A stretch of 64,000 nt of DNA, from assembly GCF_964204865.1 (NCBI RefSeq), contig NC_135250.1, forward strand, positions 24,304,001-24,368,000. Direction: 5' to 3'. This document shows, in pieces, positions 367 through 44,500 of this stretch (position 1 is the first letter of the stretch; the number at the start of each line of letters is the position of its first letter). The stretch is from Styela clava (lineage: Eukaryota). The notes beneath the pieces were generated by a model. The model saw only the letters and a program-made list of their open reading frames with translations. It was not told the DNA's origin and made no database searches. The translations under genes were made by a program, and so were the position numbers.

Positions 367-1644
367 ATGTAACTAGCATTTTAAAAAAGCCTCACACAAG
401 AATATCAATAACTGATAATTCAAACAAAGATATGACAAAAAAATTGCACAATAAAAATTAATGAAATAACAATAAAATTGGTTCAAATCAAAATTTTAAT
501 AACAAACAAAATCTATTTTCATAGAATTCGAACATCTTGCTTTTTAATTGGTAGGCCCACCGAACAGTTTTGAGTGTAATAGCCAAAGGTGCATTTACTG
601 GAAACATACTCAATTTTTTCGGAATATATATGAAAGAATATAATGAACCTTCAAAAAGCAGTATATAAGCAAAAAAATAATAATAATTAAAAGGCTCTTG
701 AAACAAAATTAAACATTATTTTCACAAATAAATGGAGTTCAAAGAAATCTAATGCAATTAACAGGCCTCTTTATGAGTGAAATGCACTGTAGCTGTAAAA
801 GATAGCCAAAAACAAAAAAAATTTACTATACTGAATATGGATTATCACATATAACCCAAATTTGTTTGTCAGATAAATTTTCAAAAGTCAAATCGTAAAT
901 CTATAGAAACTGAATTTGATAATGTACAATTGTTGAGATAAACAAACAGCAGCATAGATGCTTAAAACAACATAATTTTAAAAGAAATTTCCTCTATTTC
1001 AGTTAGACTCAAAATTTGGAATCTTTTCAAATATTCTATTCATTTTGGACATGCTTAATTACCGATAATATGAGTAGCACAGAACGACAAAATAGAGTAT
1101 CCAGAATATGTATAAATATTGTTTACCATAGCTGTGCCCTAGACAGGTGTAGTTTGAAATTAAAAACTGCCATTATGAGCTCAGAATCATAATTTTCATA
1201 CAAAATAAGCCAAATTGATTGCTACGTATCAAGTCTAGGTGGTATTCAGAAAATATGGGAACTATCAGAACCATGCTTATGAAGGACGTTTTATTGGCTT
1301 TGAAATTAGAATTCTATCTGCATAATTTTCAAAAGTATCTATAATTTTTAGGCATCAAAAAATTAGCCAAAAAGGGTCATTATCAATATCGACCAAAGAT
1401 ATAAGCATGTCTTGAGTCTGTGGAATTTGGAACATAATTATAGGAACCATCAAAATTATGCTTATGCAGGACATTTTGAACTCCTTGATATGAATAATTG
1501 ATAATTTTGCTCTCAAATTATTAGCTGGACAATGAACATAGTGGTATAGTATGATTTAGACATACACAATTGTGGAACATATTCAATAACAAACAATTTT
1601 GAAGAGAAGGTCAAAAATATATTATAATATAGTGATGTCAAAAA

Positions 1645-4600
1645 CTATGTAATATCTATATCAAGTTTATTTATCAATTCAAGCATAATATGGTATGGAT
1701 TGTCTGGTTGTGCAACAGCTTTAAAAATCGAATGGAATGAGCGTCTGTCCAGTTCAGCTGATAATTGATTTGTATAAAAATCTTTCGCTGAAATGTAAAA
1801 TTTTTCAAAATTTGCTTCAGATGGTGGAAGGTGCATTTCACTCAATACGATCGGCAGTAAAGAATTGATCCAGTGATTTGTAGACGCACTGACAAAGATG
1901 CAAGTTAAGCACCATATTGCAGTAGATATCGGAGTTCTTTGAGTAAAATTTCCGAGTGATAACATTACCCATTCTGAAACAACAGCGCTTTCGCCTCGGC
2001 TGTGTAATATTTGAAAAACATGATGAAGTAAGGTAGCAATAAGGTCTGGGAAAGGATGGAGACTCGAAACAAATTCACCGATCACTTTATTCATCATATC
2101 TTGAGTAGAAAAGAAACTGTCCAATAATAGCGGCAGAACATGAATCAAAACTATTGACTCTTGAGGAAATCCACATTTAATTTTATCGAAAAGTAAAGTA
2201 ATTCTTTCCATAGACAAAAGCCTTGATTCTATTGTTTCATCCTCTGTGGAGCTTGTTTCCGAAACTCTCATCAATCGAAAATACATGCATGTGATTGTTA
2301 AATTTAACGAAGTTAAAACACGAATAGATGATTCACTAGCTGTGAACTGATCAACGGCTAACTTAGCAATAGCGTCACAATCACTGCCAGACAAACTATA
2401 ACTAGTTATAAGCGTTTCCAGGCTTCGTAATATCGACACGTAAACATCATTCGGAACATAATTTAATTGTGGTGAACCCAGGATACTTATTGCTCCTTGT
2501 ATAAATGTTTTAGTATGAGCAGGTGTCAAAAAATCTTGCCAATTTTTGATGAGAAAAAATCCGACCGACACGACATTGCGTAAAAACTGTTGTGAATAGA
2601 AAACCACACCAGAATTGATGATCTTGAACTTGTCGCACACAAACTTCGATATCAAGCTGACTAAAGGACGAGCATATTCTTTCAACTCACACTCGAGGAT
2701 GTAAAGAGCACCATACAAAGCAAACGTTGGACAAGAAATCAATGTTGATCCTAATGCAGATTCCATCATTCCTTGTAGTATATCGCAAATCTTTTTATTA
2801 ATTCCAAGCACAGCACCGGATTTACACATTCCCAATACAAGATATTGCAGCATAATGTCATCTTCCGGAGGCTGAACTAGCTGCAGCGAATTCAAAGATG
2901 TGAACATCCATTCAAATTGTTGACGCTCTGTGAAAAAATCGGACACAAGAATAAGAGAATGAATGCAATCGCACAAAAACTGACGCGGAAGTCGCATCAC
3001 AAATGAAGGAGCATTCCCAGACTGCTGATTCTGCGGTGACATTGCACTCGCTGAACGGAACCATTCGGAAAAAAGATCGATTAGAAATTGTACGCAAGAG
3101 TGAGCATCGACAGAATTTTGTTCTACTCGTACACGAGGAGGGGAGGGAGTAATGACGTTCATTTCCGTTGCTACATCACTGGCTTCACTGTTCAAATCAT
3201 CACTGGAAGTTACAGCACCAAAATTCTCATCATCACTCGAGAGTTCACTTGTTTCCTCTTCTAGAGGTGAAATATCATGTAACATCCTAAAGGACTTCAC
3301 CGACCTTTGACCTATGCCGTAATAAAGCGGTTTCATCTCTCGTCTTTCAGGATTTGCATACAACCTTGATTTGAAAACATCATTGGGTACTGAAGAGGAT
3401 TCTGCAACTTTCAAGTAGTTTGTCGCAAGTTGAAAAAAATCGAAGGTTTCGTGAAGTTGATCACCAAAAATGACATCTCTAAGAGCACATTCTATAGTAC
3501 ATTGTATAACGTGAAGATCATGGCCTATTTTGGTTTCTGGCAACACAGGAGACGAAACACGAGGAATATTTTGAAAAGCACCTAATGCAGGTTTCCCTCC
3601 ATGCGGTTTCATACAAGTATTCATGACTAGAGCTGTAAGACCACGAATAGTTAAACAACTAATTTGTATGGCGTTTTCATCAAGTGGCGTGGCATTTTGA
3701 CTGCTATCTCCAATAGGTTGAGAAACTAGGACACCCAACAGACTAGTCCATGTCTCTTCAAATTGCATTCTACTGATCCAACCTAGACTGTTAATGCGAC
3801 CAATATAATCCTTTAACATGTCTTTTTCTTGTAAATATTCGCCAGGTGGTACATGTGATAAGCTTTCAATTTCTTTCTCGTTCATATCGTTTTTGAATAG
3901 GAGTTGAGGAACACGTGCAAGATTATTGAAAAAAGGATGGCAGAGCACAAGTTGAACAGCCCGCTTAAATGGGGCATTCAAAACAGCTGGAATAATATCT
4001 AATCCAGAATTTGATATTTTATCAAACAGTCTGCAAGTTTTAACCACAGCGAATATAGGGGTTGATTTATTGTTTAGACAACGATATGGGGATTTTGAAT
4101 CATCAAAATGCTTATTGGCAACTTGAATATTCCCTGCGTATGCTTCATAGAGCAAGTTTAGACAATTCGCAATAGTCAAAGAATAAGATAGATTGTCATT
4201 TGCATAAAACTGCTTCTGAATTTCAGGCTTCTGTTGTAACACTTGTTGCATAAACTCGAGGCAAACTGATTGTGCATCAATTTCAATTTTCATTCCATGA
4301 AGAATGGAACATATTATGAGTTCATGGCATCCAACAGCCAAACGTAACAAATTTTCGCTCAAAGTGTCAAGTTTTTGAAATGGCTGACCCACAATATTCT
4401 TCCAAATGAGACACCTTGTAAACGCTTTGCAAAGAAGAATCATCAGATCTCTGTTTTCTCTCTTCTCAAATACAGAAAACAGTTTTTGCCAGTAAGCTGA
4501 AAGTGCAGGATAATTTTGATCGTCAATCACAAAAGTTGGCTTGTCAAAATCTTTTGCAAAATCTGTAATGGGGGTAGGTGGTAACTGTCGCATAATGCTT

Positions 4601-7600
4601 TCAAGATATTCTATTAAAACTTCTAAGGTTGCATTTAAAAGTGGAGACGTGATATCGTTAGAATATCTTGCGACAGCATCATCTGGTTTCGTAATTTCCG
4701 ATATTGCAAACCTCAAACATTCTTCAAGATAATTCATATTGAATGATTCGATCCGTATTATCTCTAAAATGTCTTCGTAATCTAGAACGTTAATTGCTTC
4801 GACAACATGGTTGGATTTATGACTTCCCTTAGTAAATGAAGAAACAAGAGCTTTATACCATGATTTGTTTACCTCCTGGTCTTGATGTGAGGCAACTATT
4901 TTCGTTGTTTTATTACTAGCATTATCCTGGCCATTTACAAGTATAGCAAAGAGTCTTTTTCCCAAAGCAGCGAGGCGCCCAAGCCTTGAAATAGACTCAC
5001 ATTTGTCAAATTTTGGTTGAAGTGACTTTAGGTGCAAAATGAGTTGTTCTTTCCGTGGGCTATCATGAGCTTGAGTGAGCATCATCTCAACTCTTCCACA
5101 AGCTAGTCGATCACAAAATTCTGAAATTGCCAAAATCGGTGAAAACACGAACCAGTCTTCTGAGAGCAATAGTGACAAAAGACTATCGGATTGGTTGAGG
5201 TGCATACCCCTGAGACAAAACAGTACTCTCTTTTTAAACGACGCCCTGAATTTGGTTCCCGAGGATAATAACGATTTCAATGATTCTATAAAAAGTCCAC
5301 TTGCTGGTGAGCTGCGATGGACAGCGCTTATAAAATCTTGAATCGGTGGCTCATTTTGAAGGCTTATTATTTCTCGAGTATGGTTAACTATAAGCCAGGA
5401 CATTATTTCAACTTCAGACTGGTTTTGACAGATATAATCTGCCAGCATTATGATAGATCCCTGCTGTACCATTCCAGTGTTCAAAGGTGGTACGTACTCT
5501 GCCGTTTCACGACTCTGTTTACTTTTACCGGTCAATTCTCCCCACATCGTAAGATCTGTATATCCGATGCAAGTTAACAGTTGTGACCATAGAACAGTTA
5601 AAATTGGAAATTTGCTCGATAGAAGATTAAAGTTTACACATAATTCCTCAGTAGAGTAGAAATTTTTGTTCTTATCCTCACGAGACAATAACAGCCTTGT
5701 AGAGTGAGTGAGACGCTTGAAAGATCCCGAGCGATAAATATAAGTCACTGTGAGCAAAAACTCACTGAAAAGTTGAGACAAAAGTTCGTATGATTTTTCT
5801 TGTCCGAATAATATGACAGGATTGAATAATTCATCAACCATTCGTTCAGTTGTGAATCCTATTATTTGCAAAAAAGTTGAAGCAATGACCTCTTCAGGCG
5901 GAAGCACATTATCGCCATTTTCAGCAGCCTGTTTTTCATCATTTGCGTGAATTTCATCAATAGATTTCAAAGATCGCAATAGCTGATTAGAAAACATGGA
6001 TGGATCGATTTGCATTTCTTTTACTCGGAGGAGCAAATATTCCTCTTTGAGATGGCACAAAAGTACTCGGAGTAGAGATACAGTCTTCGCTATCCATCTC
6101 TGATGATAAGCCACAGTTCTTAAATCGGAAGGCAACAGGAAAAATATATTTAAAACCAAGTCAATAGGACGCAATGCGGTTGGTGACAAGGCTTCAAATA
6201 GACTGTGCAAATATGCCATGTCAGAATGTTTTGTAATAACTAGTTTCAAGTGTGATATAAGAGGCAAAAGCACATCTGTAACTTGTCGTGAATATTTTTT
6301 CCACTGTTCCGGATTTTCTTTTCTATAATATTGTAGAATTGTTGTCACCATTGATAGAACTTCTGGATATTCAATAATTCTAAAAAGCATGCTTTGTGTT
6401 ACTTCACGTTGAGTATCAAGATCTGACGTATTATCATGTTTCATACCAGCTCGCAAAACAAAAAGATCATGTACAATTGGTTGCAATGCCGGAATTGTAT
6501 GAGTTACAGTATCACATCCACTTGCCATTATGCCATCACACAACTGAATTATTTTCGGCATTGTCATAACGCTTTTTGAATGATGCTTTTCATATGAAAG
6601 GAGAACTAGAAAAAAGAAAACATGCGGAATCAAAATATCTGAATTACGCACTAATCCACCTTCAATTGACTCAAATTGCTTGATTATAAATCCAATAAAA
6701 ATTTGGTCAGAATCAAGTAGGCAGTAATTGACCCGCAATTGCACGAGTTGCGCAAGAAGGTTTAAAACATGCTTCTGTAAATTCACGGAGCTTGTCATCG
6801 TGTAATTTTTTAGTGATTTAATAACAATCGACTCAAAGAGACGAATATAATTCTGAATCGACATTTTATCTCCTTTTGAACGTTTCGCAGTCAAAGTTAG
6901 CTTTTTTTCGACTTTTTTCTTAATGGATCCAAACCAACCTGAACTAGCTTTTTGTGTGTTTTCTTGCTGAAGATAATGGTGGAAAGATGCATTTGCAATT
7001 GCCATTGTAAGATCGTTTAATGGCCTATGAAAAACTTGATGGTAAAAACTAGCTTTGTAATGCTGTTGATCTTTTCCATGAGTCGGTAATGGTTTGAGTT
7101 TGATTTGGTCATCAAGATCAAGCTGGCTAACCAAATTCGTTCCGAAGAGACTTTTCAGAAGTTGTTGGACAGACTGAACAGTCTGTGTGGGTTCTATGGT
7201 GAAAATGGTTCGCAAATACATCAATAAATCTTCAGTGTATTTTTCAATGTCTTCAAATGTCGTGATCTCAAGAATTTGACAGAATACGTCCAAAACTGCT
7301 TGTAATAATATGCAAAATCTATCATTTTCATCTCCATCCAAAGTGGTTTTAAAACTATCATATGCACCGACTAGGAAATCATGAACCTTCATATGAAGTC
7401 TGGAATTGGCAAAATGAAAAGGAGAGTTCTGCTTGGATGGTTTCTCCTTTTCAGCTTCTTCCGTTAAAACAGGAGATTTTCCAGCTGATCCAGTCTTTTT
7501 ATGCATTTTTTGCTCAGTTGTAGAATTAGCATCTTTTACTTCAATTTTGTCTTTTTTCTTCAAAGTGTTTGGTAGCGAAGGGGTATTTTGTAGAGTTTGA

Positions 7601-10506
7601 AGAACACTTTTATTTGGTAATGATGGCACAGCGTCAGAAATAACATGATGAAATATAGATATAAGTTTCAAGATATGATTGAACAACTTCACAGCCAGAA
7701 TCCCAATTTTATGATCTGACAGTGATGAAAGTGCATTCGGACTTTCAGTTGTAGCCGATCCTTTTATGGGTATCAAAGCTTCTTGCTCACCGAGTTTAGG
7801 ATTAGGGCCGATAGTTTGAAAGCTATGATATGCAATACCGGACATGTAGTTCCCTGCTAATAGCAATACATTTGCATGTGTTGTTATCTCAAGCGGAACC
7901 CAGGCAGAATCTAACATAGCTAAAAGCATTGTTATAATACCTGTATGTTGCTGTTGGGTTTCGGGAACATTGGCTTCAACATTTTGCATTTTGTAGAAAT
8001 TACAATCATAAGAAACAGGGTGCTTTGATACAGAGTACTCATTTGAGAGTGTAAGGAGGGCGTGTATACATCCCTGAGTCAAAGGCTTAGAAATTGATCC
8101 CGCTAACAGAGATGTTAATTTGCCGACAATGACAGAAAGATTATGTGATATTAGTGAATTTTCATCAATTTTTTCATAGCCCCTGTAAATTTTTAACAAG
8201 TTTTTTACCGTTCCTTTTTGTGTCGGGTCAATTGAAGCAGGAGAGCCAGCAGAAACACTGAAACTGTTACAAATCACAGCAGCCTCTGATGTTGTCATAT
8301 TGCACGTTAAAGAATCTATAACAAGACCACCATTTGTCACAATCTTTACGAGCATCGCCGCTGACGTTTTACGAACTCTGACATCTCTATCGCCCAAATA
8401 TTCAAAGCACATATCAACTATTTCTTCATAAATTCGATTCAATATCGAAAATACTTCTAATTTCGGAATTTCTTGCGTTGATTCCGAAGCAAATAAAATC
8501 TGTCTAAAATTTATATTTCCCAGTAATTCCATGAGGTCAACTTTAACAAGCCAGTAAGTCGTATCTTTAAGTTCCAAAATGTTCCCCAACAATTTTACTC
8601 CTAGATTGATGAAATCAGACCTTAGCAAAAATCCTATACAGGTTTTCACAGCTTGAATACTAGCTCGTAAACAAACAAGAGATTCGTCTTTTAATCCATC
8701 AGAAAGGAAATCAACAAGATTTTCAAGTAGTATATCATCTCGATTGTTACCTTTAAAATTTTCATGAAGCCACGAAGTGTAATTATTTTGAGACAATATT
8801 AATGACGAAGCAATGTACTGTGAAACTGCCATCACAGTGCAGCCACGTATCTGTGGATCATAAAAAGATTTGAATGATAATATATCTGATACATGACAGT
8901 TTCTATTGTCGTAAACCGACATAAACATTAATTTAGGACGTAGCTTAAAAATCAACCCAATACATGAAATAGTCAAATTCATTGCACTCACACGAACATC
9001 TTTAGTAGATTCTGATCCTATTTTCAAAATTCTCTCACTGAGTATTCGTACAAACATTTGAATTGGATCTGCTTCACAATAAAGATTCTCGAGTTTGTTG
9101 AAATAAATTTCCTCAGATGAATTACAATCCAAACTGTCAAGATTGGCTATTTCCAATTCTGTATTCTGTTCACTATCCACCTCTTCATGTGTTATGTCTG
9201 ATGATGGCTCATTGATAATAGCATCAGGTTTGGCATCATTAGATTGCACAGTAGATATAGGTAGTTCATTCTGGTGTGTTGACACATCCTCGGATGAAAT
9301 ACCAGCTTCATTTAATTTTTCTGTTACACTTGTCATCGTGTCCTCAATTGTATTATTTTCAGAAACTGGTGTCTCTATAGTTTGAGAAGCATTCGTACCA
9401 CTGCTATCAAAATCTCGGTCCTGGTTCGTGGAACTTTGCTTTTTTATTCCTTTCGATTTCAAAAATGTCACTAATGACTTTGAAAAAACTGTTTCTTTGA
9501 TAGGCTTTGCTTCCAGTAACTCCTTTAGTGACGCAGATGGCAACTTCAACAAAATTTGTAAAGTCTCGAGTGAAGCTGTTACAACATTTGCTTCTTTGAA
9601 GCAAGAAAAATGCACACAAAGCTCGAAAATTTGGACAATTATATCATCGAAAACAACGTCAATTTTTGAATCTTTATCTGAACCAAAACTGCCAGTTCTT
9701 CTTGTAATTTTTGTCCCTACAATTGCAAACAGAGGTATCAAATACCGTAATATGATAAGACTTCCTAATATGAAATTGACATCAAAATTTTTTGTTGAAA
9801 ATGATCCAAGTATACTAGAAACAATGTTGAATAACATAACTTGCTTTTTACTTGAGTTGCTCACAACTTCGTAAATACATATCGAAGATGTCCTTCGAAT
9901 CGCTGCAGAGGGGCTCGATAAATTTTTCATCAGTGCGTCTATAAAACTTTGCAATTCTGCTTCCGCGGCAAACGACCCAATTAAAGGAAATATTTTAGAG
10001 ACAGATGCAGATAAACATTCTTGTATGCTTTCGTCATTCCGTTCGCATATTTTTATAAATGGTGGAAGAAGACTAACAACATATGGCCTGCATTTGCTTG
10101 GACGAATCCTGTGTGCCAAACTGGAGAAACGTACAAGCGCAGTTCTCAAACTACGACTTGATCCGTTTCTTTTAATTTCTTTGTAAAACTCAATCAAAAC
10201 TTTCCCAAAATGCAGTTCTTCTGTTCCTTTTATGATTCTATTAATAGATTCCTCAGCTGCGATTCTAACATCAGCCTCAGCATCCTGACAACACAACAAT
10301 AGCATTTCAATAGTCACACCCAATAATCCAGAATATTCATTATTGCCTTTCACAGGACTGGACAGTATGCTTTCCGCCATTGTTTTACAGCATTCCTGTC
10401 TTTCTGCCTTCGTCGGCATGGGAATCTGCTCCTTTTTATTTGCATCTGTTGTCTCTCCGCCATAATACTGTTTTATATTATTCACAGATTTAACAAGTTT
10501 CTCCAT
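1645..10506 (-). CDS. HTT: Huntingtin (HEAT-repeat scaffold protein), full-length 2,953 aa, single uninterrupted ORF
   Basis: N17-like start MEKLVKSVNNIKQ. Diagnostic huntingtin blocks occur in the right order over the whole length: LLLCCQDAEADVRIAAEESINRIIK, YKEIKRNGSSRSLRTALVRFSSLAHRIRPSKCRPY, YWLVKVDL, LRVNYCLLDSDQIFIGF, PKIIQLCDGIMASG, LGWISRMQFEETWTSLLGVL, EWVMLSLGNFTQRTP, ELDRRSF. ATG at 10506-10504 and TAG ending at 1645. Confidence 0.97.
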   Translation of the reverse strand: MEKLVKSVNNIKQYYGGETTDANKKEQIPMPTKAERQECCKTMAESILSSPVKGNNEYSGLLGVTIEMLLLCCQDAEADVRIAAEESINRIIKGTEELHFGKVLIEFYKEIKRNGSSRSLRTALVRFSSLAHRIRPSKCRPYVVSLLPPFIKICERNDESIQECLSASVSKIFPLIGSFAAEAELQSFIDALMKNLSSPSAAIRRTSSICIYEVVSNSSKKQVMLFNIVSSILGSFSTKNFDVNFILGSLIILRYLIPLFAIVGTKITRRTGSFGSDKDSKIDVVFDDIIVQIFELCVHFSCFKEANVVTASLETLQILLKLPSASLKELLEAKPIKETVFSKSLVTFLKSKGIKKQSSTNQDRDFDSSGTNASQTIETPVSENNTIEDTMTSVTEKLNEAGISSEDVSTHQNELPISTVQSNDAKPDAIINEPSSDITHEEVDSEQNTELEIANLDSLDCNSSEEIYFNKLENLYCEADPIQMFVRILSERILKIGSESTKDVRVSAMNLTISCIGLIFKLRPKLMFMSVYDNRNCHVSDILSFKSFYDPQIRGCTVMAVSQYIASSLILSQNNYTSWLHENFKGNNRDDILLENLVDFLSDGLKDESLVCLRASIQAVKTCIGFLLRSDFINLGVKLLGNILELKDTTYWLVKVDLMELLGNINFRQILFASESTQEIPKLEVFSILNRIYEEIVDMCFEYLGDRDVRVRKTSAAMLVKIVTNGGLVIDSLTCNMTTSEAAVICNSFSVSAGSPASIDPTQKGTVKNLLKIYRGYEKIDENSLISHNLSVIVGKLTSLLAGSISKPLTQGCIHALLTLSNEYSVSKHPVSYDCNFYKMQNVEANVPETQQQHTGIITMLLAMLDSAWVPLEITTHANVLLLAGNYMSGIAYHSFQTIGPNPKLGEQEALIPIKGSATTESPNALSSLSDHKIGILAVKLFNHILKLISIFHHVISDAVPSLPNKSVLQTLQNTPSLPNTLKKKDKIEVKDANSTTEQKMHKKTGSAGKSPVLTEEAEKEKPSKQNSPFHFANSRLHMKVHDFLVGAYDSFKTTLDGDENDRFCILLQAVLDVFCQILEITTFEDIEKYTEDLLMYLRTIFTIEPTQTVQSVQQLLKSLFGTNLVSQLDLDDQIKLKPLPTHGKDQQHYKASFYHQVFHRPLNDLTMAIANASFHHYLQQENTQKASSGWFGSIKKKVEKKLTLTAKRSKGDKMSIQNYIRLFESIVIKSLKNYTMTSSVNLQKHVLNLLAQLVQLRVNYCLLDSDQIFIGFIIKQFESIEGGLVRNSDILIPHVFFFLVLLSYEKHHSKSVMTMPKIIQLCDGIMASGCDTVTHTIPALQPIVHDLFVLRAGMKHDNTSDLDTQREVTQSMLFRIIEYPEVLSMVTTILQYYRKENPEQWKKYSRQVTDVLLPLISHLKLVITKHSDMAYLHSLFEALSPTALRPIDLVLNIFFLLPSDLRTVAYHQRWIAKTVSLLRVLLCHLKEEYLLLRVKEMQIDPSMFSNQLLRSLKSIDEIHANDEKQAAENGDNVLPPEEVIASTFLQIIGFTTERMVDELFNPVILFGQEKSYELLSQLFSEFLLTVTYIYRSGSFKRLTHSTRLLLSREDKNKNFYSTEELCVNFNLLSSKFPILTVLWSQLLTCIGYTDLTMWGELTGKSKQSRETAEYVPPLNTGMVQQGSIIMLADYICQNQSEVEIMSWLIVNHTREIISLQNEPPIQDFISAVHRSSPASGLFIESLKSLLSSGTKFRASFKKRVLFCLRGMHLNQSDSLLSLLLSEDWFVFSPILAISEFCDRLACGRVEMMLTQAHDSPRKEQLILHLKSLQPKFDKCESISRLGRLAALGKRLFAILVNGQDNASNKTTKIVASHQDQEVNKSWYKALVSSFTKGSHKSNHVVEAINVLDYEDILEIIRIESFNMNYLEECLRFAISEITKPDDAVARYSNDITSPLLNATLEVLIEYLESIMRQLPPTPITDFAKDFDKPTFVIDDQNYPALSAYWQKLFSVFEKRENRDLMILLCKAFTRCLIWKNIVGQPFQKLDTLSENLLRLAVGCHELIICSILHGMKIEIDAQSVCLEFMQQVLQQKPEIQKQFYANDNLSYSLTIANCLNLLYEAYAGNIQVANKHFDDSKSPYRCLNNKSTPIFAVVKTCRLFDKISNSGLDIIPAVLNAPFKRAVQLVLCHPFFNNLARVPQLLFKNDMNEKEIESLSHVPPGEYLQEKDMLKDYIGRINSLGWISRMQFEETWTSLLGVLVSQPIGDSSQNATPLDENAIQISCLTIRGLTALVMNTCMKPHGGKPALGAFQNIPRVSSPVLPETKIGHDLHVIQCTIECALRDVIFGDQLHETFDFFQLATNYLKVAESSSVPNDVFKSRLYANPERREMKPLYYGIGQRSVKSFRMLHDISPLEEETSELSSDDENFGAVTSSDDLNSEASDVATEMNVITPSPPRVRVEQNSVDAHSCVQFLIDLFSEWFRSASAMSPQNQQSGNAPSFVMRLPRQFLCDCIHSLILVSDFFTERQQFEWMFTSLNSLQLVQPPEDDIMLQYLVLGMCKSGAVLGINKKICDILQGMMESALGSTLISCPTFALYGALYILECELKEYARPLVSLISKFVCDKFKIINSGVVFYSQQFLRNVVSVGFFLIKNWQDFLTPAHTKTFIQGAISILGSPQLNYVPNDVYVSILRSLETLITSYSLSGSDCDAIAKLAVDQFTASESSIRVLTSLNLTITCMYFRLMRVSETSSTEDETIESRLLSMERITLLFDKIKCGFPQESIVLIHVLPLLLDSFFSTQDMMNKVIGEFVSSLHPFPDLIATLLHHVFQILHSRGESAVVSEWVMLSLGNFTQRTPISTAIWCLTCIFVSASTNHWINSLLPIVLSEMHLPPSEANFEKFYISAKDFYTNQLSAELDRRSFHSIFKAVAQPDNPYHIMLELINKLDIDIT

Positions 10507-10797
10507 TTATATAAACTCTTGTAAGAATTCCAGTCACAAAATTACTAGTACCATCTACTTTATTACTTGGAAAATGATAGTTATAAAGAATTACATTGTG
10601 AAACTGAAGAAAAAAATGATTTTATGATAAAGTGTGAAATGAGTTATCCCAGCTAACTGAGAATAGTACGGTACATAATCAAAAACAATGACAAAAGTGT
10701 TCACATAGCGCGATACCGGTACTGTAATACCTTGAAATTTACAAGTCCCGAATTTTAATTTTTGCCTATATTATTACCAGATATTAGGACTGTAGGA

Positions 10798-11791: not shown

Positions 11792-12437
11792 CAGTGGTTC
11801 CCAACCTTTCTACCCTGGTGGACCGGTTAAATTAAATTAAATGTACTCGAGGACCGGCAAAAATTGAAATGACCGGAACATAAAAGAATATCGCATATTT
11901 GCGTAATACAATGCAACGTCGGGCACTCAATATGCATCTAGACAAAAAGGCACACTTAAAAAAACATCAATTAACTAAAAATTTTGCTGCTGTTTAGTTT
12001 CCAATATGGGATTGCAAACGATGCCTCAAGGAAGTTTCTGCAACACGTAGCCCTGCAGCGGCGTGCAACCAATTTCCTTGCTTCGCTTTAATTAAAGCTA
12101 GTGATGAAAATATTTTCATTTAAAAGTAATAAAAATATAAGTAACTCGTTGAAAATACGGACAACAGTTTGATTGCTCGATTACTTAGCGATGGGTATTT
12201 GTTATCAAGAGATATCCAAAATTGTGACAGTGATTCTTTTTTAAATCTGGACTGTAAAGTAGAATCACAATTTGAATCAAGCTTTTTCATTGGGTTTATC
12301 ATATTAATCCCTGCCATGGACCATCCCTGCATGGGATTCGAACCTGCGAACCGACGCAGAGTAATTAGAGGTGCGGTGGCGAGCGTATTCCTAACGCTTA
12401 GCCCGTTGAGCCACACCGCCGCGGTTGGGAACCAATG
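11792..12437 (-). mobile_element. Deleted hAT/Charlie (Buster-type) DNA transposon with transposase C-terminal remnant
   Basis: TIRs CAGTGGTTCCCAACC (11792) and GGTTGGGAACCAATG (ends 12437); degenerate 8-bp TSD gtatagta/ctatggta. Minus strand reads RFKKESLSQFWISLDNKYPSLSNRAIKLLSVFSTSYL, then after a break FSSLALIKAKQGNWL...LRVAETSL, matching the hAT dimerisation domain. Confidence 0.85.
12304..12420 (-). mobile_element. tRNA-derived SINE head (Pol III A and B boxes)
   Basis: Minus strand GGCGGTG-TGGCTCAACGGG (A box) ... GGTTCGAATCCC (B box). The spacing and lack of an acceptor stem do not fit a real tRNA. Confidence 0.7.
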
Positions 12438-12480
12438 CTATGGTATATGTAAAACAGAACACAAGGGAAATTTCTAATTG

Positions 12481-39775: not shown

Positions 39776-41506
39776 TCACAAGTACGTGACGTCATCTTGC
39801 GTTTGTATCCAGTTGTAAACCGCTTGATTGGAACCCTTGTTTGTGGGTTTGTAAGATACAGTCAAAACACGGTCGGTTTCGGTCTTCGTGTGGTACGATT
39901 TTGACCGAATTTTCGGTACTGGTCTGGTCTGGGTCGGTTCAGGCAAATTGTGGGCTCCCTGGTTCGAATACTTTGGTGCATATGACGCTGGGAACGCTTT
40001 ACTGTGCGGTATGGCAATATATTCGTTAGACTGTACAGTGTGCCGCCTTCTCTGGACCCAAACAGGTTCTTGTACTGGTCTTGAGTAACTATCAGCTTCG
40101 TTCATGACAAATTTCGTTGGGGAATGTAACGACGAACTCGAACTTGATGACGTCAGGGATGACGATGACGTACGTGAAGATGATGACGTCAGCGATCCTG
40201 CTGAACCAGCAGCAGAAGGCTTTCGCACCACTGGAGGGCATTGTCTTGTGCTTCGTAACGGTTGTCGTTGTCTTGAGACATCGATAAGATTTTGATAGTC
40301 TCGACGTTCAATTTCAAATTTTGTGCCTGCGTCCGAATCGTTGGAGTATAATCGTCCATTTTCGTACATTATGTCTGGTTCTTGTTCAGCAATAGGTACA
40401 AAAGCTAAATTTTGTAACTGGTTTCCGACGTTCATTCGTGCTATATGTCGTTTATGTGAAGGATGTTGCAGGAGCCTGTATGCAGCTGACTTTTTATCGT
40501 TTGCAGAATACGGACGACGATTAGGAACGCTAGGAAGTGCATCATGAGTGCCATCAGGACGAACAGAAATCCTTTTAGCGCGGTTGCGAATATCTTGAGG
40601 TTCTAGATTAGAGGAGGCGGATCTTGGCCTTGGCTTTTGATACGCATCACTGCTAGAGCGGAACGGGCCAGAATAACTTCTATTTATAATGCTTTTCCTT
40701 ACAGCAAGTGCGTATTCTGCAGCATCGCGGGAATCAGAACCGTTTGATCCTCTTCGTGTAGAATAACCAGAGCTATTATGAATCATACCATCGTCATAAT
40801 GTTTTGTGCTGTTCTGGTACACTCCCGCATTGAAAGACTGCGTTTGGCGGGGAAACGGGTATGACCCACGTTTCATAGATGATCCGTGCATACGATAGTA
40901 TCCTTCTATATCACCGGCAAAGTCTTCTTCTATTGAATAGTCTGTCTGTCTGAGTGTCGCTGGGTGATTACAGTCTGTCTGTCTGAGTGTCGTTGTTCGC
41001 TCACTTTTTTGTGAAGCTTTATCTAATGAAGAAGACCCCGTGGATGCGTTAGATATATTGGACGAAGGTGGACTCGAGGATCGGTTTGATACTGGAAGAG
41101 ACGTCGTCGATGACAGTGTAGAGGAGGCACCGCTCATTGAAAGAGCTGAATCGCTCGATGTAGACACTAAGTCAGAGTCTAAACACTTTTTTGAGGCCAC
41201 TATAGGAGGTTCCTGATTTACAGGTGTATCATCAGCCGGTAATGTGTCATCGTTATCAAAAACCTCACAGCTCGAATTTTGGCGCGAAAGTACAGACTGT
41301 ATACTTTCTTCGTCATCTTCTTGTTCTTCCGGAACAATTTCCGGTACGAGGTCAAAGTTGACAGTTACGGGATCTTGACCTTCTTCACTCAAACTTCGTT
41401 TGATCGCTTCTTGTTTTTCTTCCACCATCCACCGTTGTTCTTCTATTCTATCGTTGATCACTAAAAACTTCCGCAGGATGTCTCTGTCGAGTTGGCGCAA
41501 TTGTTT
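39776..41506 (-). CDS. LURAP1: LURAP1/LRAP35-family leucine-rich adaptor protein, coding exon 2 (576 aa, ends QDDVTYL*)
   Basis: Acceptor tttaatttcag| at 41507. Exon begins KQLRQLDRDILRKFLVINDRIEEQRWMVEE, the second half of the LURAP leucine motif (cf. vertebrate LRATDVRLMRQLLVINESIESIKWMIEE). C-terminus WIQTQDDVTYL resembles the LURAP1 PDZ-binding end QDDVTFL. The ORF-track start is a TTG inside the exon, not the real start. Confidence 0.85.
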   Translation of the reverse strand, partial: KQLRQLDRDILRKFLVINDRIEEQRWMVEEKQEAIKRSLSEEGQDPVTVNFDLVPEIVPEEQEDDEESIQSVLSRQNSSCEVFDNDDTLPADDTPVNQEPPIVASKKCLDSDLVSTSSDSALSMSGASSTLSSTTSLPVSNRSSSPPSSNISNASTGSSSLDKASQKSERTTTLRQTDCNHPATLRQTDYSIEEDFAGDIEGYYRMHGSSMKRGSYPFPRQTQSFNAGVYQNSTKHYDDGMIHNSSGYSTRRGSNGSDSRDAAEYALAVRKSIINRSYSGPFRSSSDAYQKPRPRSASSNLEPQDIRNRAKRISVRPDGTHDALPSVPNRRPYSANDKKSAAYRLLQHPSHKRHIARMNVGNQLQNLAFVPIAEQEPDIMYENGRLYSNDSDAGTKFEIERRDYQNLIDVSRQRQPLRSTRQCPPVVRKPSAAGSAGSLTSSSSRTSSSSLTSSSSSSSLHSPTKFVMNEADSYSRPVQEPVWVQRRRHTVQSNEYIAIPHSKAFPASYAPKYSNQGAHNLPEPTQTRPVPKIRSKSYHTKTETDRVLTVSYKPTNKGSNQAVYNWIQTQDDVTYL

Positions 41507-44500
41507 CTGAAATTAAAGAAAATGGAGTAAATTACTAAATTCTCACAAAAATAACGAAAATCAATAGTTTTATGCCATTAAAATTCATATCCAAAATTTT
41601 GACAAATAAATATTAAGCGTGATCTTTTACAGTCAGGGTATAAAAAAGCTATTGTGTAACCCACGCCAAAAAATCCGTTCTAAACTCGTTTATGAACCCA
41701 GATGTGGGGCAGATATCATGCAATCAGTAAAACTATGTAACTCAAAACAATGCACAACAGTTTAATTGTCTTCGTGTCTGTCTATAACACACAAACAAAT
41801 GACATCGACAAATACACTTGATTGTCTTGTGAATGATTTCAGTGACTTTTGTTTGCGCAAGACGACCTTTTAAATGTTTGACATTGCGCAGGCTCATCTT
41901 GAATTTTATTTCATTTACATTGGCCAAGGAAGGTTCAATGATAACCTAGCTCTATTCGAGCTTGATTATCAATGTACCATACAAAAGTAAGATATGAAAT
42001 TACGGTATTTATTTTAACGTAGGTAAAGGTCAATGAGTTACTTGTGATATGTAACCTTTCGTACAAATTTTGAAAATAATGACGTCACAAAAGTGACGTA
42101 AGACTTTCATAACAAAATTAATGACCTTCACACAAACAACTTAGAAATCCTGCTATGCTAATTAGTTGAGGCAGTAAAAATTTACTGAAATCTACATTGC
42201 GGCGATTCTGTCTCGAAAGCAATAGTAGATTCAGCAAAAACCCAAACGAGTATATACAGACAAGACATTCCAATTATGCATCTATATCAATATAAATTAT
42301 TAATAGGTATGAGACAGATAAACCAACAATATGCAAGTCATGGCCCAGACCGAACTAGACGCCTTCTGGTCGGAACAATGTTCCTTATCTCACAAAAGTG
42401 GAGATACCTTGGTATTTCATTGCATAACTATCAAATGGAATTCTTTCCATATAAGAATTACAGATTCAATATTCGTTGCAGCACAAGTAAAAATGTACAA
42501 CTTCATCACACATAGAAATTCAATTTGCATTTCGATATATATGATTGTTAGTATGCTTTCCTTCTTGCACAAATAATTTTTTTGCTGCATTTACGCCAGG
42601 GTGTTAGATGCTCAATAACCATATTTTACGCTTATTTTTTAGTCCATCATTCGTGTTTATAAACAATAAAAAATTTCTAAATTTTGCTCGGTTTCCGGGT
42701 ATGCGCTTAAACTTATTTGGCGACGTTTAATCATTTTCCGGCTAAAATTCAATTTATTTTTGCATTGTTTTGGATTTCATAGAAATGTCGATACCTAAAT
42801 ACACAGATAAGAATTGTTGTTTTTTGCATTTTCCAGTTAAGTGACCTAGAAAGTTGTGAAAATCAAATATTTATGATATAAAAGACACACAAACCAATAC
42901 CCAGGTACTGATAAGAAAATTCAACAATTCAAAATGGGTTAAATCCACACCATTATCATGCATGGTCCGAACTCGTCAAGTGATAAACCTTAAGTTCGAT
43001 CGCGCATAAGTTCGACATATATCAAGGTTTTGAGTAGCTCTTCATTTCTACAGTATATATTTTTTAATAAAGCAAATATTATGATGTCACGTACGCGTGA
43101 CGTCAGTATTATCAATTCCACAGATTTTTTCTAATTATTTTTTGGTCAGTAATGAATAATAGCTATATTCTAATCGAATCGAAGTACCCTTTCCCTTGTT
43201 AACCACAAAATTATAGTCTAGACCCGTTAATGCACTCCGTTAACCCTCGATGACGCCCGCTATCAGTCTTTGTCAGAAATAGTAAGCCATAAAGCAAACA
43301 AACACAAGTTAGCGGGTTGATTATTTCGATTTAACCAATGCCAAATTACGTATCAGCCATATATAAAACAGGTCATTTACCGAAGGTCCATCCTTAACCA
43401 CCATTTTTGAGAAAATAAAAACTACTAGTTTACCAAACTTGCCGATGATGATGTATGTCTTAGTCGTGTCTTGACGCTACAGGAACCCAGTAAAATATCG
43501 AACCAAGACACGACAGAAACGATAATTGCATTTTTGTGTTGTAAAATTGTACATTTTTGTGTAAACTTAACACAAAACAGATAAAACTATACCGTGATAA
43601 GCGTGATAATATGCAGACCTTTTCCACTCACTAAGTAATGCGGTCTCAATGAGTAAAATAAATCGCCCAAACTGGAATTTTAATAACTTTCTAGTTTTTA
43701 TTTCGTAAATCATCTCATTTATCATTACGGATAGAAAAAGAGAGAGAGATGGAGTACAGTAATTTGGTAGCATTGAGTAAACCAAGACTAGCAAGATTTA
43801 AATCGACTGGAATCAAATTTTGAAAATTGAAAAAAGATTCCCTTCCGCACGAACGATTGTTATATGAGCAAACATATAATCAACCCCAATAACTTCGTTT
43901 ATTTCTAGATTTTATAGTTTCCCATTTTGATCATGTAGTGTAAAATCGATCAAATATTTAGATGGCTCCAAAAATTGCGAAATAAAAGCACGCAATTATT
44001 ATAAAAATATTGGATATCATTTATCATTCGATCCAAGCAAAAATATATATATAATGCCACTGTATTGGTTAGGTAAAATTTCGGAGCGTGATAATAGAAG
44101 TGTAAAGGATGTCGGTTTGTCCATCCCATTTATATTCTAACGTCCTTCTCTACTCCCCTTTGCACAATCGCCGTAGGGGTTGTTTCTATTTACGATCGTA
44201 GTAATTATAAGGTTTCTCAATGAACAGGTGCCATATCAAAGGTTTGTCACGCCGATTATTATAGATTTTACAAGTAAAACTGATTAATCGTTTCACAGGG
44301 AATCGTGTATGGATGATAAACATGTTTTCGTAAATTGAATGGGTAATTGTAACTGTAAGCAATTATACAAGAAATTATAACCATATTCTTATTTAACGAA
44401 ATATGAAATGTGTGGTACTCAATTCTGTGCTACGATCATTTTTTTGTTGTGATACCCTGTACTGGCATCCACTAAATGCTACTTTGTGTGAAAAGACCGC

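What the first reader, a model, noticed from the sequence alone, without database searches (positions are those of the whole stretch)
1645..10506. Full-length huntingtin with no introns in the coding sequence (8.86-kb single ORF)
Seen: one stop-free 2,953-codon frame carrying N-HEAT, bridge and C-HEAT huntingtin motifs in order, in a genome whose next gene (TTC22) has 10 introns in 1.8 kb of CDS. Established: human HTT has 67 exons, and from memory Ciona and amphioxus HTT have about 60+ coding exons and Ciona HTT is about this length, so hidden stop-free introns are unlikely. Inference: all coding introns were lost through reverse transcription of a ~9-kb mRNA, either as a retrogene that replaced or supplements the parent or by cDNA gene conversion in place. 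The intact frame in AT-rich DNA suggests purifying selection. I saw no poly(A) remnant or target-site duplication downstream, which fits an old event. Such a gene could not make exon-skipping or incomplete-splicing HTT isoforms.
Basis: partly seen in the sequence, partly recalled or inferred. Interest (0 to 1): 0.9.

Follow-up and report, generated by a model that had tools for sequence, protein, structure and literature searches.

The report
Intronless huntingtin gene in Styela clava
The sea squirt Styela clava encodes its only huntingtin gene as one uninterrupted 8.9-kb reading frame, where its relative Ciona has 61 coding exons. This is not special to huntingtin, because the same genome also holds intronless versions of other giant genes such as ATM and dynein-2 heavy chain.

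Summary
Window 1645-10506 (minus strand) is one 2,953-codon ORF carrying all four huntingtin Pfam domains in order. It is collinear with human HTT and is the only HTT match in the 377-Mb genome. The genome is Styela clava: the ORF is 98% identical to RefSeq XP_039263514.1.

There are no hidden introns. No insertion longer than 7 aa exists relative to spliced Ciona, Clavelina or vertebrate HTT. Coding signal is continuous in all 97 windows tested. The frame reads ungapped through 48 of the 60 Ciona intron sites.

There is no poly(A) relic, no target-site duplication and no spliced-leader relic.

I verified single-ORF DYNC2H1 (4,311 codons), ATM (3,165 aa), XPO5, alpha-catenin, PI3K p110 and about seven kinesins in this genome, next to paralogues split into many exons. 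The scan's earlier notes had flagged many intronless housekeeping genes elsewhere in this genome; HTT itself was noted only on this stretch.

The best reading is loss of all introns through a cDNA of the spliced mRNA, as one case of a genome-wide process. I could not separate retrogene replacement from in-place cDNA conversion.

The parts
1645..10506 (-). Complete huntingtin coding sequence in one exon: ATG at 10506-10504, stop TAG at 1647-1645, 2953 codons
9850..10302 (-). Htt_N-HEAT_1 domain (aa 69-219)
   Evidence: E 1.6e-53
9124..9156 (-). 33-nt (11-aa, aa 451-461) stretch in the poorly conserved acidic/Ser-rich linker. It is absent from RefSeq XP_039263514.1 of another S. clava assembly. 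It is read as an indel polymorphism, because it is too short for an intron and the flanking residues also differ.
6217..8862 (-). Htt_N-HEAT domain (aa 549-1430)
   Evidence: E 1.8e-226
4954..5742 (-). Htt_bridge domain (aa 1589-1851)
   Evidence: E 2.5e-54
1831..3993 (-). Htt_C-HEAT domain (aa 2172-2892)
   Evidence: E 3.9e-139
10604..10616 (-). Candidate 3' splice or SL trans-splice acceptor: a pyrimidine run followed by CAG, with the G at 10604, 97 nt before the ATG. Inferred from sequence only.
   Evidence: Read. Ciona HTT mRNA is SL trans-spliced with a 98-nt 5' UTR. Not tested with reads.
1290..1295 (-). First AATAAA after the stop codon (350 nt downstream), a candidate polyadenylation signal. 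No A-run of 7 or more follows it.

Best explanation
This is the genuine, single-copy, functional huntingtin orthologue of Styela clava. Its whole 2,953-codon coding sequence lies in one exon.

The ancestral tunicate gene had dozens of coding introns: Ciona keeps 60, of which about 32 to 39 are shared with vertebrates. In the Styela lineage all of them were removed precisely. The most likely route is a full-length cDNA of the spliced mRNA made by a retroelement reverse transcriptase. That cDNA either recombined with the resident gene, or inserted elsewhere and outlived the parent copy.

The event is not specific to HTT. It is one instance of a genome-wide, largely all-or-none loss of introns from a subset of large conserved genes in this genome.

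It is probably old. There are no scars, and single-ORF HTT proteins were recovered from three other Styela-side lineages, one of them on a 20-kb contig.

Shown here: the ORF, its identity, its single copy, the absence of hidden introns, the precise read-through of Ciona intron sites, and the other intronless giant genes.

Inferred: the involvement of cDNA, the age of the event, and expression by trans-splicing at the acceptor 97 nt upstream of the ATG.
For: -: the ORF.
- four HTT domains in order and collinearity with human HTT.
- one HTT place only in 377 Mb.
- 98% identity to S. clava XP_039263514.1. A 2953-aa NCBI protein (P0121) sits on a contig of the same length as C1. The only gap against the RefSeq protein is 11 aa.
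- the neighbouring ORF is 100% identical to S. clava LOC120339464 on a contig of that same length.
- no insertion longer than 7 aa relative to spliced HTTs.
- frame 0 is the best coding frame in 97 of 97 windows, using a codon model trained on other genes. P(ORF by chance) is about 1e-94.
- using the published exon sizes, the ORF is ungapped within 5-6 residues of 48 of 60 Ciona intron sites. The other 12 lie in indel-rich segments.
- Ciona has 61 coding exons, and the chordate ancestor had at least 40.
- intronless DYNC2H1, ATM, XPO5, alpha-catenin, p110 and kinesins sit beside paralogues split into many exons.
- P0002, P0003 and P0004 are single ORFs of 2869-2923 aa that form a 100%-supported clade with S. 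clava. P0003 lies on a 20,272-nt contig.
Against: - Expression, the 5' UTR structure and the absence of splicing are therefore not shown directly.
- None of the classic marks of a cDNA insertion is present: no poly(A) tail, no target-site duplication and no spliced-leader relic.
- The Logan contigs could not be fetched.
- Some of Ciona's 60 introns may be Ciona-lineage gains that were never present in the Styela ancestor.
Confidence: 0.8

Rival explanations
1. In-place replacement. A full-length (or several overlapping) cDNA of the spliced HTT mRNA recombined with the resident gene and erased the introns. The promoter, outron, trans-splice acceptor and chromosomal position were left untouched.
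For: - Single copy with no relic of a second locus.
- No poly(A), target-site duplication or SL relic at HTT or at five other intronless genes.
- An acceptor-like site lies 97 nt before the ATG, a distance similar to the 98-nt trans-spliced 5' UTR of Ciona HTT.
- Read-through of the intron sites is precise.
Against: - Erasing about 60 introns over 9 kb needs a full-length cDNA with cross-overs at both extreme ends.
- In animals this route is documented mostly for one or a few adjacent introns.
- If the event is old, the lack of scars says little.
- Conserved position could not be tested.
Confidence: 0.4
2. Orphan retrogene. A processed full-length HTT cDNA inserted at a new site and gained expression, possibly helped by SL trans-splicing, which lets a promoterless insert in a transcribed region make a capped mRNA. 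The multi-exon parent was later lost.
For: - The pattern across the genome is all-or-none.
- Other intronless genes sit directly behind unrelated ORFs on the same strand. XPO5 follows another coding frame by about 40 nt, and p110 follows an LRR ORF by 222 nt. That suggests relocation into transcription units.
- The precedent of HAP40/F8A, which became a single-exon gene by retroposition with loss of the parent (PMC7725122).
- The HTT neighbours here (a caspase cluster, a TPR-like gene, a LURAP-like gene) are none of the vertebrate HTT neighbours.
Against: - No poly(A), target-site duplication or SL relic.
- No parental remnant.
- HTT lies alone, with about 20 kb free of recognisable genes on each side, so it is not inside an obvious host transcription unit.
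- Tunicate synteny with vertebrates is poor anyway.
Confidence: 0.4
3. Stepwise loss of introns one by one through genomic deletions, without any cDNA.
For: Tunicates have high intron turnover. Some genes of this genome show intermediate states with long but not complete exons, for example open frames of 500-1000 aa in several kinesin and PI3K loci.
Against: - Sixty independent exact deletions in one gene, while paralogues and neighbours keep their introns, is very unlikely.
- There are no indels at 48 of 60 sites.
Confidence: 0.1
4. The frame hides one or more in-frame, stop-free introns that are spliced out of the mRNA.
For: The linker at aa 360-480 is poorly conserved, and an 11-aa difference from the RefSeq protein lies there.
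Against: - 33 nt is too short for an intron, and the flanking residues differ as well, as expected for a haplotype indel.
- No insertion longer than 7 aa exists relative to spliced orthologues.
- The protein length of 2953 aa compares with 2946 in Ciona and 2942-2953 in Clavelina.
- Coding signal is continuous.
- The protein recorded at NCBI for this assembly is also 2953 aa.
Confidence: 0.03
5. Assembly artefact or cDNA contamination.
For: None beyond the unusual structure.
Against: - The locus lies inside a 32.7-Mb contig with ordinary AT-rich, repeat-bearing flanks.
- A second S. clava assembly gives a collinear protein differing by 2% and one indel.
- At least six other large genes on other chromosomes show the same structure.
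Confidence: 0.02

Closest known systems
Ciona intestinalis/robusta huntingtin (Gissi et al. 2006, PMC1636649)
   Same: It is an orthologue of almost the same length (2946 against 2953 aa) with the same four-domain layout. It has no polyQ or polyP tract. Its mRNA is SL trans-spliced with a 98-nt 5' UTR, and Styela has an acceptor-like site 97 nt before the ATG.
   Different: Ciona has 61 coding exons with introns making up 73% of the gene, whereas Styela has one coding exon. Protein identity is only about 38%.
Orphan retrogenes, that is single-exon genes that replaced a multi-exon parent, e.g. HAP40/F8A in amniotes (PMC7725122)
   Same: A multi-exon ancestral gene is now represented only by an intronless copy with no parent left and no poly(A) relic. 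The example given is huntingtin's own binding partner.
   Different: HAP40 is a gene of about 1.1 kb. Here the intronless CDS is 8.9 kb and replaces about 60 introns. Relocation, which is the defining evidence for F8A, could not be tested here.
Reverse-transcriptase (mRNA-mediated) model of intron loss, e.g. PMC3652778; classic in yeasts
   Same: Introns are removed precisely, adjacent introns are lost together, and the gene stays single-copy.
   Different: The usual signature is loss of a few, mostly 3', introns. Here every coding intron of a 9-kb CDS is gone, and the same has happened to CDSs of up to 12.9 kb in this genome.
Single-exon gene population of Ciona (Satou et al. 2008, PMC2760879; PMC3155783)
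   Same: Ascidians carry many single-exon genes: 15% of non-operon and 38% of operon genes in Ciona. These are enriched in ancient conserved genes. Several Styela intronless genes sit in operon-like positions.
   Different: Those surveys describe mostly short genes, with a mean of about 390 (reported there as bp) for intronless sea-squirt genes. Giant intronless orthologues of 3000-4300 aa were not reported in the papers I could search. HTT here is not in a tight operon.

Membership tests
Huntingtin (HTT) orthologue | Htt_N-HEAT_1, Htt_N-HEAT, Htt_bridge and Htt_C-HEAT present in this order, each above the Pfam cut-off | tested here: met
   181.6, 754.9, 184.8 and 465.6 bits
Huntingtin (HTT) orthologue | Near full-length collinearity with experimentally characterised human HTT | tested here: met
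   aa 479-2945 aligned to 680-3135 of 6x9o_A, 1521 bits
Huntingtin (HTT) orthologue | Orthology: single copy, and placed with tunicate HTTs in a tree | tested here: met
   (one place in the genome). (clade with other Styela-side sequences, with the Ciona+Clavelina and vertebrate sequences falling outside it; all forks 100% SH-aLRT, quick tree)
Huntingtin (HTT) orthologue | N-terminal polyQ/polyP tract (a vertebrate feature, not defining for invertebrate HTT) | tested here: not met
   The N-terminus has no Q or P run. Ciona HTT lacks them too.
Huntingtin (HTT) orthologue | Binding of HAP40 | not tested
   No complex prediction or HAP40 search was run
Processed retrogene (retroposed copy) | Lacks all introns of the parental gene | tested here: met
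Processed retrogene (retroposed copy) | Poly(A) tract at the 3' end | tested here: not met
   the longest A-run in the 1.5 kb after the stop is 6 nt
Processed retrogene (retroposed copy) | Target-site duplications flanking the copy | tested here: not met
   no shared word of 13 nt or more between the 1.5 kb upstream and the 1.6 kb downstream. The 11-12-mers occur at chance level.
Processed retrogene (retroposed copy) | 5' end carries the mRNA's own 5' end (here a spliced-leader relic) | tested here: not met
   no SL-like 16-mer (4 mismatches or fewer) within 400 nt upstream of the ATG
Processed retrogene (retroposed copy) | Lies at a locus different from the parental, intron-bearing gene | not testable with these tools
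The one neighbour search gave no Clavelina hit and only an old Ciona accession.
In-place mRNA-mediated intron loss | Exact removal of introns without indels at the former sites | tested here: met
   48 of 60 Ciona intron sites are ungapped. The remaining 12 lie in indel-rich regions.
In-place mRNA-mediated intron loss | Ancestral chromosomal neighbourhood retained | not testable with these tools
   As above

The most novel reading that the evidence does not exclude
Styela clava, and probably stolidobranch ascidians more widely, have replaced a sizeable share of their large, ancient multi-exon genes by full-length intronless versions of up to 13 kb: DYNC2H1, ATM, HTT, XPO5, alpha-catenin, p110 and roughly a fifth of the kinesins. 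The process is all-or-none and mediated by cDNA. It would imply an unusually processive germ-line reverse transcriptase or an efficient cDNA-genome recombination pathway. SL trans-splicing may make it viable by allowing promoterless copies to be expressed. As far as the searchable literature shows, this has not been described.
Probability: 0.35. Interest if true: 0.75.

Novelty: new member of a known kind. Interest (0 to 1): 0.55.

Why it matters
For huntingtin research: this chordate makes full-length HTT from a CDS with no splice choice at all. No exon-skipped or intron-retained coding isoform can arise from within it. It is a natural test of whether HTT function needs any coding-region splicing, and the complete ORF can be taken from genomic DNA.

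For genome evolution: losing about 60 introns from one gene, and doing the same to genes of up to 12.9 kb while paralogues stay intron-rich, is an extreme example of mRNA-mediated gene restructuring in a chordate. It gives a countable set of events with which to ask three questions: which reverse transcriptase did it, whether copies moved or were converted in place, and what trans-splicing and operons contribute.

Tried and rejected
- **Logan contigs:** The contigs of P0002, P0003 and P0004 and the Clavelina and Ciona loci could not be fetched. This ruled out direct intron maps of relatives, synteny and dN/dS.
- **Synteny by a neighbour gene:** the 578-aa ORF at 39779-41512 is S. clava LOC120339464 (LURAP-like). 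It gave no Clavelina hit and only an old Ciona accession, so the result is inconclusive.
- **Spliced-leader relic:** I looked for the Ciona SL and a Styela SL-like variant upstream of the ATG. There was none.
- **Insertion scars:** no target-site duplication or poly(A) at HTT, and no consistent poly(A) at five other intronless genes. ATM alone has an A10 run 135 nt after its stop.
- **Flanking frames:** Pfam on 14 unnamed open frames around HTT (10, 4) gave nothing. No gene is recognisable within about 20 kb on either side.
- **Metagenome scan:** no tunicate contigs were recognised. It did return distant HTT-like genes in long frames from unknown eukaryotes.
- **TTC22-like neighbour:** its exons were not joined into a model, and that step was left out.
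- **Literature:** searches for intronless huntingtin, Styela intron loss and Styela single-exon genes found no prior description.
- **Rejected readings:** hidden in-frame introns and an assembly or cDNA artefact.
Full report
**1. Observation**

One search lists one ORF of at least 150 aa in the first 14 kb of the window: 1645..10506, minus strand, 2953 aa, starting with ATG.

Pfam places Htt_N-HEAT_1 (aa 69-219), Htt_N-HEAT (549-1430), Htt_bridge (1589-1851) and Htt_C-HEAT (2172-2892) in this order, all far above their cut-offs. The sequences of solved human HTT structures align from aa 479 to 2945 at E = 0.

At the window's composition (A 0.324, T 0.318) a stop codon is expected in 7.06% of codons. 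A 2953-codon open frame therefore has a chance probability near 1e-94. The next longest open frames in 104 kb around the gene are 578, 387 and 285 codons.

GC at the three codon positions is 0.453, 0.347 and 0.304.

**2. Whose genome**

The best database hit is Styela clava XP_039263514.1 (2942 aa): 2890 of 2953 residues identical, with one gap of 11 aa at positions 451-461.

The same 90% cluster holds a 2953-aa protein from NCBI (P0121) on a contig of 32,746,820 nt, which is the length of contig C1 of this genome. The ORF at 39779-41512 is 100% identical to S. clava LOC120339464 on a contig of that same length.

The window is therefore S. clava. The annotation of this assembly already records a protein of exactly the length of the ORF.

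**3. Are introns hidden in the frame?**

I aligned the ORF with HTTs whose sequences come from spliced models or cDNAs: Clavelina, two Ciona species, chicken and Anolis. No S. clava segment longer than 7 aa lacks a counterpart.

A codon log-odds model trained on four other S. clava genes scores frame 0 best and positive in all 97 windows of 180 nt. Mean scores were +15.2 for frame 0, against -27.9 and -31.4 for the other two frames.

The 11-aa difference from the RefSeq protein is 33 nt, lies in the poorly conserved linker and has differing residues on both sides. I read it as an indel between haplotypes, not an intron.

**4. Read-through of known intron sites**

Gissi et al. (PMC1636649) report 61 coding exons for Ciona HTT. 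They also report SL trans-splicing with a 98-nt 5' UTR, 32 introns shared in position and phase with vertebrates, and an ancestral chordate gene of at least 40 coding exons.

Their Additional file 2 gives the exon sizes, which sum to 8841 nt, or 2946 codons plus the stop. Projecting the 60 intron sites onto the alignment, the S. clava frame is ungapped within 5-6 residues of 48 of them. The other 12 fall in indel-rich stretches.

Intron absence is therefore exact. This is what a copy made from spliced mRNA predicts.

**5. Copy number and scars**

A six-frame search of the whole 377-Mb assembly finds a single HTT place, with one candidate at the first look and one scored.

After the stop codon the longest A-run in 1.5 kb is 6 nt. 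AATAAA occurs at +350 and +1305. No word of 13 nt or more is shared between the 1.5 kb upstream and the 1.6 kb downstream, and 11-12-mers occur at chance level.

Neither the Ciona spliced leader nor a Styela SL-like variant leaves a relic upstream of the ATG. A pyrimidine run followed by CAG ends at 10604, 97 nt before the ATG. It is a plausible splice or trans-splice acceptor, but this is untested.

**6. Surroundings**

- To the left of the window, at about 22 to 33 kb away, lie caspase-domain genes. One has the whole domain in a 387-aa single ORF.
- To the right, a multi-exon gene with TPR-like exon translations lies on the + strand at about 31.2-35.2 kb. Further right is the LURAP-like gene.
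- Fourteen unnamed open frames around HTT gave no Pfam match: four and ten. No gene is recognisable within about 20 kb on either side, so HTT stands alone and is not part of a tight operon.

**7. The wider pattern**

Earlier notes of this scan list dozens of intronless housekeeping genes in this genome. I tested that lead independently.

| Gene or family | Result |
|---|---|
| PI3_PI4_kinase family | The kinase domain lies in open frames of 3169 and 1066 aa at two loci, and in pieces of 40-220 aa at about ten others |
| ATM | The long frame is a 3165-aa ATG-initiated ORF, best matched by human ATM (2.4e-256) |
| PI3K p110 | A complete class-I PI3K catalytic subunit of 1054 aa, with an LRR ORF 222 nt upstream on the same strand |
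| Exportin-5 | One 1214-aa ORF, with another coding frame ending about 40 nt before its ATG |
| Alpha-catenin | One 901-aa ORF, while vinculin on C14 is in small exons |
| Dynein heavy chains | One lies in a 4311-codon open frame, C5:15083432-15096364, and is DYNC2H1 (PDB 6rla, E = 0). The other dynein heavy-chain loci match in frames of 41-220 aa |
| Kinesins | Seven loci hold the motor domain whole (model positions from 1-34 to 325-327 of 327) in frames of 497-1144 aa. Some 25-30 others are fragmented |

Complete intron loss from very large conserved genes therefore recurs in this genome, and HTT is not the longest case. None of the six genes checked has a consistent poly(A) relic.

**8. Age**

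Three further full-length HTT proteins were called as single ORFs on Logan contigs:
- P0002 and P0003: 54% identical to S. clava and 88% to each other, on contigs of 8,951 and 20,272 nt.
- P0004: 49% identical to S. clava, on a contig of 9,689 nt.

They form a 100%-supported clade with S. clava, apart from Ciona+Clavelina and the vertebrates (this is the quick tree, because the careful search did not finish).

A 20-kb contig around an 8.6-kb ORF is more likely genomic than transcript. That would put an intronless HTT in a second, deeply diverged lineage. Because the contigs could not be fetched, this is an inference.

**9. Mechanism**

The shown facts are these:
- The read-through of intron sites is exact.
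- All coding introns are gone at once.
- Paralogues and neighbours remain intron-rich.
- Many genes show the same structure.

These fit an origin from cDNA of spliced mRNA much better than sixty separate genomic deletions.

The evidence does not separate the two cDNA routes.
- **In-place conversion** is favoured weakly by the absence of any scar at six genes and by the acceptor-like site at a Ciona-like distance from the ATG.
- **Retroposition with loss of the parent** is favoured weakly by the all-or-none pattern and by intronless genes sitting directly behind unrelated ORFs. There is also the precedent of HAP40, huntingtin's partner, which became a single-exon gene that way in amniotes (PMC7725122).

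If the event is old, scars would have decayed under either route. I give each route about 0.4.

**10. Known or new**

Ciona surveys report many single-exon genes: 15% of non-operon and 38% of operon genes (PMC2760879). These are enriched in ancient conserved genes (PMC3155783).

I found no paper that mentions an intronless huntingtin, or intron loss or single-exon genes in Styela. One paper notes introner elements in S. clava (PMC12130899).

The gene model is visible in the public annotation. I therefore class HTT as a new member of a known kind (complete mRNA-mediated intron loss, or orphan retrogene). The genome-wide set of giant intronless orthologues is the more interesting lead.

**11. 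Limits**

- Expression, UTR structure, synteny and dN/dS remain untested.

Noticed in passing
G000:C5:15083432-15096364 (+) (L064:3432-10000 plus L065:1-6364): A 4311-codon stop-free frame encodes the dynein-2 heavy chain DYNC2H1 (PDB 6rla, E = 0). At 12.9 kb it is a longer intronless CDS than HTT. The other dynein heavy-chain loci are split into small exons.
   Followed up: partly
G000:C17 (L060:489-9986, -): A 3165-aa ATG-initiated single ORF encodes ATM (PI3/4-kinase and FATC domains; human ATM 2.4e-256). An A10 run lies 135 nt after its stop.
   Followed up: partly
L061:1669-5313 (-), L062:1970-4675 (-), L063:3094-6258 and 6480-7703 (-): Exportin-5 (1214 aa), alpha-catenin (901 aa) and a class-I PI3K p110 subunit (1054 aa) are each a single ORF. 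XPO5 and p110 follow another ORF on the same strand by about 40 and 222 nt, an operon-like arrangement.
   Followed up: partly
G000:C3:24,847,000-24,962,000 (sample L008): About 90 tandem copies of an 18-mer that differs from the Ciona spliced leader plus donor at 2 positions. They are spaced 0.5-1.9 kb apart and interleaved with tRNA genes (11 tRNA hits in 3.6 kb). This may be the S. clava SL RNA gene array. The motif is followed by TT rather than GT, so the leader boundary is unclear.
   Followed up: partly
L010:7233-8393 (-), L012:2844-3677 (-), L012:6954-7286 (+), i.e. 22-33 kb left of the window: A cluster of caspase-domain genes. One has the complete Peptidase_C14 domain in a 387-aa single ORF.
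   Followed up: partly
window 12290-12440 (-): A tRNA-like stretch upstream of HTT with a box-B-like GGTTCGAATCC motif. It looks like a tRNA-derived SINE.
   Followed up: no
L017:10735-18552 (+), contig JAAUXU010170678.1; also L013 and L014: Metagenome contigs from unknown eukaryotes carry distant HTT-like genes (26-28% identity) in very long frames: 2605 aa in L017 and 1570 aa in L013. Intron-poor HTT genes therefore exist outside chordates.
   Followed up: partly
window 39779-41512 (-): A 578-aa exon of S. clava LOC120339464 (730 aa, weak LURAP match). It evolves fast: Logan relatives are 81, 56, 48 and 43% identical, and Ciona is 35% identical over a third of the length.
   Followed up: partly
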